From Euprymna scolopes (lineage: Eukaryota), in the NCBI GenBank assembly GCA_053919585.1, contig CM132813.1: a stretch of 64,000 bases of DNA. One strand, 5' to 3'. A model generated the notes under the pieces. The model was not told the origin of the DNA and did not search any database. It saw only the letters and a program-made list of their open reading frames with translations. Each line of letters begins with the position of its first letter. Position 1 is the stretch's first letter. The position numbers and the translations under genes are program-made. This document shows positions 6,705 to 31,222 of the stretch, one piece after another.

Positions 6705-6729
6705 AACACTAATGTATATACATATATCT

Positions 6730-6958
6730 AGTAATTTATAAAAATATATATGACGATTAAGCTACACTGATTATTCGGCGTTTCATCCACTCTAGGATTC
6801 GCCAGGCTTATGCGCATAAGCTAAATCGTCATATATATTTTATAAATTACTAACTAGCTCTACTTACGTATTGAGCACTTTTGAAGTAAATACTTAAAGT
6901 TTACGCATAAATCTATACTTTCGTATATTAATTTTATGTGAGTAAATGAAGTAGTTAT
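6730..6958. mobile_element. ORF-less HHR-bearing inverted-repeat element (PLE pseudo-LTR-like), copy A
   Basis: 6730-6762 and 6817-6851 are inverted repeats; 6853-6958 is the reverse complement of 30500-30608; contains the HHR motif at 6758-6810. Confidence 0.75.
6758..6810 (-). ncRNA. Type I hammerhead ribozyme motif with A6>G core mutation
   Basis: UAAGC-CUGGCGA-AUCC uagagu GGAU-GAAA-CGCCGAAUAAUCAGUG-UA-GCUUA; paralog of 30636-30688. Confidence 0.8.
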
Positions 6959-14921: not shown

Positions 14922-14965
14922 TCCTCTGATGAGATGGTAGACATCGAAACCCTATAGGTTAAGGA
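14922..14965 (+). ncRNA. Type I hammerhead ribozyme motif
   Basis: UCCU-CUGAUGA-GAUG guaga CAUC-GAAA-CCC uaua GGU-UA-AGGA. Core boxes intact; one C/U mismatch at the base of stem III. Confidence 0.75.
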
Positions 14966-22729: not shown

Positions 22730-23330
22730 AGGTTTTTTAAGCATTTCTCATGCAGAATGCTATTGAGATGCTTTAAACTGTGGTAGTCTGGAAGGGAAAT
22801 ATCTATAGAGCATGGCGGATAGAGCGGAGCTGTCTAGCACGCGTCGTTCAATTTTTCCAGGGTCGGTTTATTAAGGTTAGGTCGGGCATTATCGTGGAGG
22901 AGAATTGGCTTTTTTAGTGAGTGTTGCTTTCGAGGGTTTTATGCATTTTACTGATTTGTTAAAAGTACTTATCTGCCGTATTTATTCTGCCGTCATTAAA
23001 ATAAGCAGTAAAGGATGAGACCGGTCGGAGTCCACCAATCACTCAGTATGACGTTTTTTAGTGCAACTCGTGTTTCCAAAAGTGACGTGAACTTCTTCAG
23101 CGTCTAACCACTGATTTTATCGTCGACTGTTTTAAATAATTCACTTTTCATCGCACTTTACAATCCGGTCGAGAAACGGGTCGTTATTGTTGCGTAAAAT
23201 TATGAATGGTGACACTCAATAACGGCGTTTCTTTTGGTTGTTGTTTAATTTCTGAGGCACCCATTTATTAAGATATTTGCCATGCTAATCTCTTTCAAGT
23301 AGTTGGAAATCGGCGTATATGTTACATCTA
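22730..23330 (-). mobile_element. mariner transposase relic
   Basis: Minus strand: FLDRIVKCDEK*, LHDNARP, YPPCSIDISLPDYHSLKHL (cf. TGDEKW, HDNARPH, HPPYSPDLAPSDY). Confidence 0.88.
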
Positions 23331-23443
23331 ATTCAAAAGCAATTCAGGAAAAGGTGTTCCTGGATTGGTTTCCAGTAAGTATCTTCTGAATCTCTTTCTC
23401 TACTTGATTTTAAAATACAAATAAAAAAAATGGTGCCATATGC

Positions 23444-24500
23444 ACTGAATTCTAAAGAAAACCCGCCAGCAAACGCCTCTTCGTACATTTCAAATCTGCA
23501 CTACCTCTCAAGGACAAACTAAACTAAGCACATGCCGAAATCTCACGCATACAAGAAAAATGCAATAACATCTCCGACAAACATACACACACTAACAATT
23601 TCCTACAGCCCCTCTCACTAAACGGCTACCCTAATACGATCGTATTCTCACTTAAAAAGAAAAAACGCAACACCCGACCCTTCTCTAACAATGGTTTTCT
23701 AAAACTACCCTTCCTCAGTGACAAAATCTCATCTTCAATCCGAAAAGCCATCCGCAGCGAGGGACTCAACCGAAAACATCCATCGCATACACCTTCCCCT
23801 TGTTCACTCTCTAATTGCCCTATATCACACACAGGTTTATGCTTTAAGAACCACGTTGTTTACGACCTACAATGCGCTAAATGCAGTGCATCTTATATTG
23901 GAAGCACTACCAGATTGCTTCACCACCGCATTTAAGAGCATTTAAACACTACTGCTTCGTCGTTCTAAAAACATATTCGCCCTTACATTAATTCAGAACC
24001 GGATTTTCACATCAACATTCTTGCTTCTTCAAGAAACGTAGGTCAACTCCGTATTCTCGAATCTTTAATTATTTCAAAAAATACTCCCACACTAAACAAT
24101 AAACTGGAATTAGCTCCGCTTTTATAATATAAGTTTAAAACATAAGACATACAATAATTAAAATAATATTTTAAAAAAATGTTTTAAAATAATTAAAAGA
24201 TTAATAAAATCTCACAGAGTTACCTCCCTTCAACCCTTGATGAATAGTCATCTCCCTTGATTCACAAACGCAACAAGTATTTTAAACACCAACTGATTTA
24301 TTTTAACGTTCTCCTAACGTCATTTTTTGTTCTATATTTCACGGTATCACGTGGCAAACTCTGTAGCTGCTTTTCAAATGTTGAACACTCTTCCGCTGTC
24401 TTCTCTTGAAAAAGGACTAATAGGTCTGAAATATATTGAGATTTATAACACCATTGAATACAACAGGAAAAAGTACTGTTGTTTAGAGTTAAAACTTGTG
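23444..24500 (+). mobile_element. Penelope-like retroelement, 5'-truncated: RT thumb, GIY-YIG endonuclease and 3' pseudo-LTR
   Basis: One frame with in-frame stops, ending at TAA 24125-24127: KPASKRLFVHFKSALP...LNGYP...LKLPFLSD...CFKNHVVYDLQCAKCSASYIGSTTRLLHHRI*EH...LRILESLII...PTLN. HHR follows downstream. Confidence 0.93.
24402..24441 (+). ncRNA. Minimal type I hammerhead ribozyme with U3-A8 core variant, in the Penelope pseudo-LTR
   Basis: UCUC-UUGAAAA-AGGACU aau AGGUCU-GAAA uaua U-U-GAGA; same strand as, and ~275 nt downstream of, the GIY-YIG stop. Confidence 0.75.
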
Positions 24501-29736: not shown

Positions 29737-30225
29737 CTAGCGTGGAGGAACCGGCATTGCCTAGTTGTAAAGAAAAAAACGGGATATGGGTGTCAGCAGC
29801 GAAAAATGAAACCGAAAGCAAATTATGTGAGTAACAAATAAGACCAAATATGCTGCGTGCGAACTCTCATTACTTCAGTTTCCAAAAGTAACTTTTACCG
29901 TCCGATCGACGTCGGCACTAATGTTTTGACGTTGAAAAAATCATTTCATAATGAAACAACGAATCGACTGTTCGCGCATGCGCAATTAGCAAACATCATT
30001 TAAATGCACGTTTTTACCTGACCATTTAAAACTAAAAGACCTTTCTGCATGAAGTCAGTGAATATTTTTTCTTATTTTTTGAATATTCAATGTCCGATAA
30101 ATTGTTGTTTTTAAGTGTACAATATTTGTCCCGTTTCGATGCTAATGACAAATATTTTCGCCAACACACCAACACACCAACCCACCAACCCACCAACACA
30201 AATGTATTTGCCGTTATATAATAGA
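29737..30225 (-). mobile_element. Complete non-autonomous Helitron-type element (489 bp)
   Basis: Minus strand reads A|TCTATTATATAAC...(GTTGGTGG/GTTGGTGT)n...GCAATGCCGGTTCCTCCACGCTAG|T: 5'-TC, 3'-CTAG, inserted in an AT dinucleotide without TSD. Confidence 0.7.
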
Positions 30226-30455
30226 TGTGATATTATTGCGTTTTTCTTTATTATATTTACACATTATCTTACGTTTACTCAAGAGGTAATAGGAGTAATC
30301 GATGAAGTTGAATCTTGTTTTAATTCATTATCTGAAATATATTCACAACGGGATAAAACACCGTTTTATTTGGTCTTCACAAAATATATAAGTAAATTTA
30401 TAACGAATAAAATCAATCGTAGGTTGAATATAAAGTTTGCATTTTCACTATTAGT

Positions 30456-30499
<44 letters not shown>

Positions 30500-30505
<6 letters not shown>

Positions 30506-31168
30506 CTACTTCATTTACTCACATAAAATTAATATACGAAAGTATAGATTTATGCGTAAACTTTAAGTATTTACTTCAATTGTGCTCAATACGTAGGTAG
30601 AGCTAATTAGTAATTTAGAAAGTATATATGGCGATTAAGCTACACGGAATATTCTGCGTTTCATCCACTATAGGATTCGTCAGGCTTATACGCGAATTCT
30701 GTGGTTGTTTCTTTTTTTATATATATGTTGAGGATTTTAGTTAGCCAATCAGCTTTCTAGTATCCACCGCGCCCCTTCCTATCAGCCAATTGGCATGTAT
30801 TTTATCGAAGAAAGGATCTGTTTTAGAACTAGGTTAGTGGTTTAAGGTAGACGTTTTCCTCCTTTTATATATATTTAAATGTACATATGTGTACGCACAC
30901 ACATGCACACACACACATATATATACATATATGTGTGATCGTTTATGTATATTCATGTTTATTTAATTTATTTATTTGTTTGTTTTCTATTGTTTTTGTT
31001 AGTTTTAAAGCTATTCTGTATCGCTATCCTAGAGTAAGTTTTATTTTGTGAACACAGTTGTTTGCTATTTCTCGTCTACAGTTTAATAGATTTTGGGGTT
31101 CTTTAAAGTACAGGATAGCAAACGCAGACTATTCAGTGTAGCTTAATCGCCATATATATTTTATAAAT

Positions 31169-31171
<3 letters not shown>
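30500..31171 (-). mobile_element. ORF-less HHR-bearing element with inverted ends, embedded in (TA)n (PLE pseudo-LTR-like), copy B
   Basis: 30609-30661 and 31120-31171 are inverted repeats; (TA)n on both flanks; homologous to 6730-6958. Confidence 0.75.
30636..30688 (-). ncRNA. Canonical type I hammerhead ribozyme
   Basis: UAAGC-CUGACGA-AUCC uauagu GGAU-GAAA-CGCAGAAUAUUCCGUG-UA^GCUUA. All core nucleotides present, three stems, GUA cleavage triplet (predicted cut between 30641 and 30640). Confidence 0.9.

Positions 31172-31222
<51 letters not shown>

What the first reader, a model, noticed from the sequence alone, without database searches (positions are those of the whole stretch)
30500..31171. 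Intact hammerhead inside a 670-bp ORF-less element with inverted ends, inserted in (TA)n
Seen: a fully canonical HHR at 30636-30688(-); its 3' half is repeated in inverted orientation at 31120-31171; two AGCCAAT boxes lie inside (30744, 30784); (TA)n flanks both sides. Comparing the three stem III versions in the window suggests an ancestral perfect palindrome CUGAAUAUUCAG (inference). This is the best candidate for an active ribozyme and for a retrozyme-like or solo pseudo-LTR unit mobilised in trans.
Basis: partly seen in the sequence, partly recalled or inferred. Interest (0 to 1): 0.8.

Follow-up and report, generated by a model that had tools for sequence, protein, structure and literature searches.

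The report
Truncated Penelope-like retroelement copy with hammerhead
The stretch is an old, 5'-truncated, dead copy of a very abundant Penelope-like retrotransposon that always lands in (TA)n repeats and carries a hammerhead ribozyme motif in its 3' untranslated region; it is an ordinary member of a known kind, not an independent ribozyme element.

Summary
The described features are real: a type-I hammerhead (HHR) motif at 30636-30688(-), an inverted copy of its 3' half at 31120-31171, two AGCCAAT boxes and (TA)n on both sides. The unit is not autonomous or self-contained. It is the last 618 bp (30505-31122) of a ~2.9-kb retroelement, plus a 52-bp inverted second arm.

- **Family size:** more than 43,000 HHR-bearing copies in this 5.9-Gb genome.
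- **Family structure:** longer copies continue without a break into a reverse transcriptase plus C-terminal GIY-YIG ORF. It carries the diagnostic motifs of the Hydra clade of Penelope-like elements (DKT, CxCX5C linker, CxxC..E..N..CxH).
- **ORF remnant:** the window copy still encodes the last 32 codons of that ORF.
- **Insertion site and ends:** all sampled copies abut (TA)n. Two discrete 3' ends 103 nt apart, together with inverted arms, are the known PLE "tail" and inverted-copy signature.
- **Stem III inference:** the proposed ancestral perfect palindrome is not supported. It occurs in only 1.4% of about 46,000 copies.
- **What could not be tested:** self-cleavage. Rfam models do not recognise the motif.

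Other first-reader notes of this scan describe the same family elsewhere in this genome.

The parts
30459..30504 (.). (TA)n target microsatellite, left flank. It abuts the element's 3' end.
   Evidence: In all 30 sampled copies the same terminal bases (ACTACTTCATTT on the + strand) directly follow (TA)n.
30505..30607 (-). 103-nt 'tail': the 3'-most part of the element. It is present on the long arm only and lies between the family's two alternative 3' ends.
   Evidence: In the sampled loci, 3' ends fall only at family position 1 (24+) or 103/104 (11). Both kinds sit flush with (TA)n. This corresponds to the PLE tail and two RT initiation sites of PMC11167929.
30631..30693 (-). Type-I hammerhead motif with extended helix I. 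The core motif spans 30636-30688 and the predicted cleavage lies between 30641 and 30640.
   Evidence: Two private substitutions relative to 44 other copies (30690 and 30646) both fall at unpaired positions. There is no Rfam match.
30743..30790 (.). Two CCAAT boxes (AGCCAAT on +, ATTGGCT on the element's sense strand) flanking a GC-rich block, 60-100 nt upstream of the HHR. Possible pLTR promoter module (inferred).
   Evidence: Conserved in divergent subfamily copies, whereas the TATA-like stretch between the boxes and the HHR is not.
30862..30935 (.). Internal (TG/TA)n low-complexity stretch of the 3' UTR, variable in length between copies.
   Evidence: It is the source of sub-threshold mir-297/mir-466-like Rfam hits, which are spurious.
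31024..31122 (-). Remnant of the family ORF: the last 32 codons of the GIY-YIG endonuclease C-terminus (includes the conserved N and the CxH motif) plus the stop codon. 31122 is the 5' truncation point.
   Evidence: translation. It matches the C-terminus of the family ORFs and of intact ~720-aa relatives.
31120..31171 (+). Short inverted second arm, a copy of family positions 104-157 (HHR 3' half and downstream). Its outer end lies at the tail-less 3' end, flush with (TA)n.
   Evidence: It is 98% identical to other family copies.
31172..31222 (.). (TA)n target microsatellite, right flank.

Best explanation
Window 30505-31171 is one old insertion of a Hydra-clade Penelope-like retroelement (PLE) into a (TA)n microsatellite.

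**Structure (shown)**
- The long arm (31122 to 30505, minus strand) is a 5'-truncated copy. It holds the last 32 codons of the RT/GIY-YIG ORF and the ~530-nt 3' UTR. The UTR carries two CCAAT boxes, the family's type-I hammerhead motif and a 103-nt 3' tail.
- The short arm (31120-31171) is an inverted copy that starts at the alternative, tail-less 3' end.

**How it arose (inferred from published PLE biochemistry)**
- The element's endonuclease cut both strands of the AT-rich target.
- Reverse transcription was primed on both strands from two alternative internal initiation sites on the RNA.
- The result is two opposed, 5'-truncated arms. The copy cannot move by itself.

**The hammerhead (inferred)**
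It is the standard one of the family. As in other PLEs, it presumably processes multimeric or read-through element transcripts, probably as a dimer or with help from the element's protein. Its activity at this locus is untested.
For: **One large family, always in (TA)n**
- More than 5820 first-look candidates for the 667-bp stretch, with the best 40 at 89-95% identity.
- 43,457 exact matches to the HHR 5' half and 23,476 complete HHR frames, against 0 for the reversed control patterns.
- All 30 sampled copies have the same 3' terminus directly after (TA)n.

**The window copy is truncated**
- Other copies continue past 31122 for up to ~2.5-2.9 kb, with variable end points.
- The distal part is about 15-fold rarer among first-look candidates.
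- One locus shows the pLTR - full unit arrangement (L037).

**Coding capacity on the HHR strand**
- ORF pieces tile colinearly on intact 718-723-aa proteins from public data.
- Motifs present: RWR/RWK, ADKT, KDHK..RLINP, FDIxDFYPSI, YRDD, SNHP, CNCRx4C (CxCX5C), VY..YIG..R..H, CxLCxxEK, LLN, CxH.
- GIY-YIG scores 19.3 bits. The nearest Atlas clusters are reverse transcriptases, mostly cnidarian.
- These motifs, the size below 3 kb, (TA)n targeting and a 3' HHR are the published features of the Hydra clade (PMC8557442).

**Ends and arms**
- Two discrete 3' ends 103 nt apart, both flush with (TA)n.
- Inverted arms are frequent: about 15 head-to-head pairs per 100 HHR hits.
- This fits the PLE tail and the cleavage and extension of both strands described in PMC11167929 and PMC8557442.

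**ORF remnant:** the window copy encodes the ORF's last 32 codons.
Against: - No intact full-length ORF was found among the ~20 longer copies sampled. The architecture therefore rests on tiled pieces and on intact relatives from other data.
- Pfam hits are sub-threshold.
- No phylogeny with reference Hydra families was made.
- The tail is 103 nt, against the 30-40 nt described for other PLEs.
- Rfam does not recognise the HHR.
- Cleavage could not be tested. Only assembled contigs of RNA libraries were available, and they show presence but no RNA ends.
Confidence: 0.9

Rival explanations
1. An independent non-autonomous unit (retrozyme-like, or a solo pLTR acting as its own transcription unit). 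Its RNA, carrying the HHR and the 3' recognition region, is mobilised in trans by PLE proteins.
For: - The conserved CCAAT boxes lie just upstream of the HHR.
- Many very short copies exist, often as head-to-head pairs. They share a fixed inner end at a GC|GC palindrome ~10 nt upstream of the HHR core: 7 overlapping pairs among 100 listed hits, and window 6729-6955. This hints at a defined RNA 5' end.
- There is a large excess of 3' parts over internal parts.
Against: - The window copy runs 430 nt beyond that point into the ORF's end.
- Truncation points of longer copies are variable.
- Direct tandem HHR pairs are rare, 2 against ~15 inverted pairs per 100, so the retrozyme architecture is absent.
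- No circular junctions were seen in RNA contigs.
- A promoter upstream of the RNA start would not be copied, so short copies would be dead ends.
Confidence: 0.07
2. The hammerhead motif of this copy is a sequence fossil that does not self-cleave, either at this locus or as a monomer.
For: - No Rfam match.
- Pair 10.1-11.1 is A-U, and helix III has an A.C mismatch.
- The isolated fold is only modestly better than shuffles (z = -1.3).
- The inverted arm is predicted to trap the HHR 3' half in read-through RNA.
- PLE HHRs show low activity in vitro, work as dimers, or need the element's protein (PMC4209133; PMC11167929).
Against: - All conserved core nucleotides and all helices are intact. The two private substitutions lie at unpaired positions.
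- Differences between subfamilies fall only at tolerated positions: N7, 10.1 A/G opposite U, loop 2 and the mismatch position. This suggests the motif was kept under selection in source copies.
Confidence: 0.4
3. A TA-targeting DNA transposon or MITE with terminal inverted repeats.
For: Inverted repeat of 52-73 bp and TA-rich flanks.
Against: - The left arm lies 103 nt inside the left end.
- Only 2 of 30 sampled copies have this right end.
- The others continue into an RT ORF.
Confidence: 0.01

Closest known systems
Hydra clade of C-terminal-endonuclease Penelope-like elements (Craig et al. 2021, PMC8557442)
   Same: - Size below 3 kb with a single RT plus C-terminal GIY-YIG ORF.
- DKT in place of DKG, and an RWK-type motif.
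- CxCX5C linker, with CxxC and CxH around the conserved E and N.
- Insertion into (TA)n and an HHR near the 3' end.
- 5' truncation, partial tandems (pLTR) and inverted upstream copies.
   Different: - The host is apparently a mollusc with a 5.9-Gb genome, where the family reaches tens of thousands of copies. [quoted passage not shown]
- RWR instead of RWK.
- The tail is 103 nt rather than 30-40.
- No phylogeny with the reference families was made here.
Hammerhead ribozymes of PLE pseudo-LTRs and metazoan type-I HHRs (Cervera & de la Pena 2014, PMC4209133)
   Same: - Type-I topology, with helix I open and helix II of 4 bp.
- Short, palindromic helix III/loop 3 that would allow dimer formation.
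- Location in the repeated 3' part of a PLE, and massive copy number.
- Pairs on opposite strands 100-700 bp apart.
   Different: - Helix III is longer than the 'minimal' PLE motifs and carries a conserved N.A mismatch.
- Pair 10.1-11.1 is A-U or G.U.
- Not recognised by Rfam models.
Poseidon PLE of Anolis carolinensis, PAc (Frangieh et al. 2024, PMC11167929)
   Same: - AT-rich target.
- Both DNA strands are used.
- Two alternative 3' ends, explained by two internal RT initiation sites, define a 'tail'.
- The HHR is not needed for insertion in vitro.
   Different: - A different clade.
- There the HHR overlaps the ORF start; here it lies in the 3' UTR.
- Tail length differs.
- Nothing was tested biochemically here.
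Metazoan non-LTR retrozymes (Cervera & de la Pena 2020, PMC7229834; Li et al. 2026 preprint, 10.64898/2026.07.22.740005)
   Same: Non-coding sequence with a type-I HHR, related to PLE pLTRs.
   Different: - Retrozymes are tandem arrays of short HHR units that give circular RNAs.
- This is a single truncated copy with an inverted fragment, and its family has its own ORF.

Membership tests
Hydra-clade Penelope-like element | Single ORF with reverse transcriptase followed by a C-terminal GIY-YIG endonuclease | tested here: met
   Family ORF pieces on the HHR strand tile in order on intact 718-723-aa relatives, with the EN at the extreme C-terminus. GIY-YIG scores 19.3 bits, below Pfam's cut-off. 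Atlas neighbours are RTs. No intact ORF was found in the sampled copies.
Hydra-clade Penelope-like element | Short element (<3 kb) | tested here: met
   About 2.9 kb between the 3' end and the upstream pLTR in L037. 2.55 kb in L051 before the inverted arm.
Hydra-clade Penelope-like element | DKG motif changed to DKT; RWK motif present | tested here: met
   ADKTRNFY and RRMRWRANFF in L037:3677-4282(-). Relatives have DKS/DKT and RWK. RWR is a variant of RWK.
Hydra-clade Penelope-like element | [quoted passage not shown] | tested here: met
   CNCRHRTIC, CKLCLHEK, LLN and CVH in L046:998-1429(-). All are conserved in relatives. N and CVH are also present in the window remnant.
Hydra-clade Penelope-like element | No CCHH motif inside the endonuclease | tested here: inconclusive
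   No obvious C..C..H..H block between the GIY and YIG regions by eye. No reference alignment of canonical PLE endonucleases was available.
Hydra-clade Penelope-like element | Insertion into (TA)n | tested here: met
   30 of 30 long arms and 10 of 11 tail-less ends abut (TA)n.
Hydra-clade Penelope-like element | RT/EN phylogeny groups with reference Hydra families | not testable with these tools
Hammerhead ribozyme, type I | Conserved core (CUGANGA, GAAA, UH) with three helices in type-I topology | tested here: met
   The core is conserved in 23,476 genomic frames.
Hammerhead ribozyme, type I | Match to a curated covariance model (Rfam Hammerhead families) | tested here: not met
   No hit at gathering score or at E<=10, even on 96 nt.
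Hammerhead ribozyme, type I | Compensatory base-pair changes supporting the helices | tested here: inconclusive
   Only one-sided changes (A-U to G.U at 10.1) and changes at unpaired positions among subfamilies. No double compensatory change was seen.
Hammerhead ribozyme, type I | Site-specific self-cleavage | not testable with these tools
   Only contigs of RNA libraries were available, and they give no RNA ends.
Metazoan non-LTR retrozyme | Tandem repeats of short HHR-bearing units | tested here: not met
   No direct repeat of the unit at the locus. Genome-wide, neighbouring HHRs are mostly inverted pairs: ~15 pairs against 2 direct pairs per 100 hits.
Metazoan non-LTR retrozyme | Circular RNA product | tested here: inconclusive
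   No consistent back-joined form among the contig joints. Contigs are a weak test.
TIR DNA transposon / MITE | Inverted repeats at both extreme ends, shared by the family's copies | tested here: not met
   The left arm lies 103 nt inside the end. The right arm is present in only 2 of 30 copies.

The most novel reading that the evidence does not exclude
The 3' UTR module (two CCAAT boxes, HHR, tail) of truncated copies like this one is a working transcription unit. Its short RNAs would start at a fixed site about 10 nt upstream of the HHR core. PLE proteins would copy them in trans, producing the thousands of mini head-to-head HHR pairs joined at a GC|GC palindrome. That would amount to a SINE-like sub-element nested in a Hydra-clade PLE. 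The N.A mismatch in helix III, kept in all three amplified subfamilies, would be needed for that cycle.
Probability: 0.12. Interest if true: 0.5.

Novelty: new member of a known kind. Interest (0 to 1): 0.2.

Why it matters
For this locus, little.

At family level it documents three things:
- A Hydra-clade PLE has expanded to more than 40,000 HHR-bearing copies in a large, apparently molluscan genome.
- It has strict (TA)n targeting and an unusually long (103-nt) tail between two discrete 3' ends.
- Its hammerhead is invisible to Rfam models yet kept intact at every core position across subfamilies.

This is useful for repeat annotation of this genome, for HHR descriptors, and as natural data on the two-site initiation model of PLE integration.

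Tried and rejected
- **Rfam:** gathering and permissive scans gave no hammerhead. They gave only sub-threshold miRNA-like hits on the internal (TG/TA)n stretch, which are low-complexity artefacts.
- **Pfam on single ORF pieces:** nothing for the RT pieces. GIY-YIG and RVT_1 scored only below the cut-offs.
- **RNA evidence:** all runs offered were assembled contigs. The family is present in poly-A RNA libraries, but starts, ends, strand and cleavage cannot be read, and DNA carry-over is not excluded.
- **Cluster look-up of relatives:** gave no names or taxa.
- **Rejected readings:** MITE/TIR transposon; retrozyme tandem unit; ancestral perfect stem III palindrome; a conserved TATA box upstream of the HHR, since the TATA-like stretch is not conserved between subfamilies.

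Full report
**Observation**

The minus strand of 30636-30688 reads as follows. Helix I 5' strand UAAGC, core CUGACGA, helix II AUCC/GGAU with loop UAUAGU, then GAAA. Helix III follows (CGCAGAAUAUUCCGUG, with an A.C mismatch), then U-A and helix I 3' strand GCUUA.
- The isolated 66-nt RNA has this three-way junction as its minimum-energy fold, with helix I extended by GCG/CGC across a 2x2 internal loop. The energy is only modestly better than shuffles (z = -1.3).
- A descriptor that demands the core, 4 bp in helix II, 3 bp in helix III and 5 bp in helix I finds exactly this site in the window and none in 200 dinucleotide-preserving shuffles.
- Against 'fully canonical': no Rfam hammerhead family matches at gathering score, at E<=10 on 1.1 kb, or at E<=10 on 96 nt. 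Pair 10.1-11.1 is A-U rather than G-C.
- The inverted repeat (30589-30661 against 31120-31192, 82%), the two AGCCAAT boxes (30743, 30784) and (TA)n on both sides are all present.

**The stretch is part of a huge family**

The window is a piece of a 5.9-Gb genome.
- A search with 30505-31171 gave 5820 first-look candidates. The 40 that were scored were 89-95% identical.
- Exact pattern counts give 43,457 copies of the HHR 5' half and 23,476 complete HHR frames. The reversed control patterns gave 0.
- In all 30 sampled loci the same terminal bases (window 30505 onward) directly follow a (TA)n run. This end is therefore a true terminus, with microsatellite targeting.

**The window copy is truncated, not a unit**

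- 28 of 30 sampled copies match only up to window position 31122. They then continue with sequence shared among themselves but absent from the window.
- Following this outwards, copies end at many different points, up to ~2.5-2.9 kb.
- The distal part has about 15-fold fewer candidates than the 3' part (370 against 5820). This is the 5'-truncation gradient of a retroelement whose 3' end lies at 30505.
- In locus L037 a partial upstream copy is followed, after ~140 nt, by a full unit of ~2.9 kb. This is the pseudo-LTR - ORF - pseudo-LTR arrangement.

**Coding capacity**

On the HHR strand the longer copies carry ORF pieces broken by frameshifts and stops. No intact ORF was found in the sample.
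- The pieces tile in order along intact 718-723-aa proteins found in public data with the endonuclease piece (4541 cluster representatives at E<=0.001).
- From the N-terminus the motifs are: RRMRWR (relatives RWK), ADKT, LLKDHK..P.TRLINPTK, FDIIDFYPSI, F.DL.MG, GLYRDD, FLDV, SNHP.
- After these comes a variable (AAT)n-encoded poly-Asn/Ile tract, then the linker CNCRHRTIC (CxCX5C).
- The endonuclease follows: VY..YIGMT..FKTRYYDH (GIY-YIG; Pfam 19.3 bits, below the cut-off), CKLCLHEK, LLN and CVH.
- Feature-based neighbours of the RT piece are reverse-transcriptase clusters, mostly cnidarian.
- These are the features Craig et al. list for the Hydra clade of PLEs. They are size <3 kb, DKT for DKG, an RWK motif, a CxCX5C linker, and CxxC and CxH around the conserved E and N. 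They also include insertion into (TA)n in almost all families and canonical HHRs near the 3' end (PMC8557442).
- The window's 31027-31122(-) translates to FAILYFKEPQNLLNCRREIANNCVHKIKLTLG followed by a stop. This is the C-terminus of that ORF. 'ORF-less' therefore reflects truncation.

**The inverted end**

- Among all sampled family copies the 3' ends fall at just two places: family position 1 (24+ cases) and position 103/104 (11 cases). Nothing lies between, and both kinds sit flush with (TA)n.
- The window's short arm (31120-31171) is a copy that starts at the second site and faces the long arm. The same architecture recurs in many loci and at window 6729-6955.
- Among the first 100 genomic HHR hits, about 15 head-to-head pairs lie within 1 kb, against 2 direct pairs.
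- This is the published PLE signature: strong 5' truncation, an inverted 5'-truncated copy next to the 5' end, and a 'tail' present at one end only (PMC8557442).
- It has a biochemical explanation in the Anolis Poseidon element. That protein cleaves and extends both strands of AT-rich targets and starts reverse transcription at two adjacent internal sites, with the tail being the sequence between them (PMC11167929).
- Here the tail is 103 nt rather than 30-40. That the same mechanism applies is an inference.

**The hammerhead in its family**

- The window copy differs from 44 other sampled copies at two positions of the motif (30690 and 30646). Both are unpaired, so the core and all pairs are intact.
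- Subfamilies differ in the motif only at N7 (A/C/G/U), at 10.1 (A or G opposite U), in loop 2 and at helix III position 15.5. All of these are tolerated positions. This is consistent with selection on the motif in source copies, but there is no double compensatory change, so covariation support is absent.
- Position 15.5 is A in 16,970 copies, G in 19,784, C in 9,088 and U in 639, always opposite A.
It is most simply explained as CpG decay of the C type, and no amplified subfamily has it.
- Helix III is palindromic enough to allow the dimeric mode proposed for metazoan and PLE HHRs, which cleave poorly as monomers in vitro (PMC4209133). The Anolis PLE HHR needs the element's protein and is dispensable for insertion in vitro.
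- At this locus a transcript that includes the inverted arm is predicted to pair it with the HHR 3' half in a ~70-bp duplex. This would block the ribozyme fold unless transcription starts inside the element.

**Expression**

RNA libraries labelled mollusc or invertebrate hold many contigs of the family. Only assembled contigs were available. They show no RNA ends, strand or cleavage, and DNA carry-over cannot be excluded.

**Promoter idea**

The two CCAAT boxes and the GC-rich block between them are conserved in divergent subfamilies. The TATA-like stretch between them and the HHR is not. Many short head-to-head pairs share an inner end at a GC|GC palindrome ~10 nt upstream of the HHR core. 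This could mark a fixed RNA 5' end. It is kept as the minor, more novel reading.

**Age**

The copy is 5-9% diverged from its relatives. Its two arms differ at 4 of 54 positions, so it is not recent and an empty-site polymorphism is unlikely.

**Verdict**

This is a 5'-truncated, immobile copy of a Hydra-clade PLE with the family's standard 3'-UTR hammerhead and the standard inverted arm, in a (TA)n target. The kind is known. The family, as far as the searched literature shows, is a new and very abundant member. Two other first-reader notes of this scan describe the same family elsewhere in this genome.

Noticed in passing
window 6729-6955: A second copy of the same family. An antisense arm (family positions 103-190, with a complete HHR) is joined to a sense arm that runs to position 1 and (TA)n. 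The joint is the perfect palindrome GCTTATGC|GCATAAGC. The sense arm lacks the HHR from the core to about the cleavage site.
   Followed up: partly
genome-wide (one search list, e.g. G000:C1:2836774-2836893, 10553264-10553383, 14158103-14158222): Head-to-head HHR pairs overlap by exactly the 4 bases GCGC, ~10 nt upstream of the core. There are 7 such pairs among 100 listed hits. A fixed inner end suggests a defined 5' end of the template RNA or a preferred template-switch point.
   Followed up: partly
genome-wide: Helix III position 15.5 is A, G or C in three large subfamilies (16,970, 19,784 and 9,088 copies), always opposite A. The pairing U is found in only 639 copies. The mismatch seems to be kept rather than repaired.
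   Followed up: yes
window 14926-14960 (+): Another hammerhead-like core: CUGAUGA, a 4-bp helix II, GAAA, and a short palindromic helix III CCUAUAGG. It has no convincing helix I. It may be a minimal HHR of another repeat family.
   Followed up: no
window 23050-23718 (-): Loose HHR-pattern hits in the region that another note of this scan calls a Penelope-like element with an unusual core. Not examined here.
   Followed up: no
window 30862-30956: mir-297/mir-466/mir-3149-like Rfam hits far below gathering scores. They lie on the (TG/TA)n stretch of the 3' UTR and are low-complexity artefacts.
   Followed up: yes
L056:2119-3039(-), L046:998-1624(-), L023:946-1596(+): The family ORF holds a trinucleotide microsatellite between the RT thumb and the endonuclease linker. 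It is read as poly-Asn or poly-Ile depending on frame, and its length differs widely between copies.
   Followed up: no
L037 (G000:C22:10911200-10919000): A pseudo-LTR (5'-truncated upstream copy ending at family position 9), ~140 nt, then a ~2.9-kb unit. It is the most complete arrangement seen, and its ORF is broken.
   Followed up: partly
window 30115-30600 (+): A mechanical 161-aa ORF runs through the (TA)n tract into the element's tail. It has no coding signal and is regarded as spurious.
   Followed up: no
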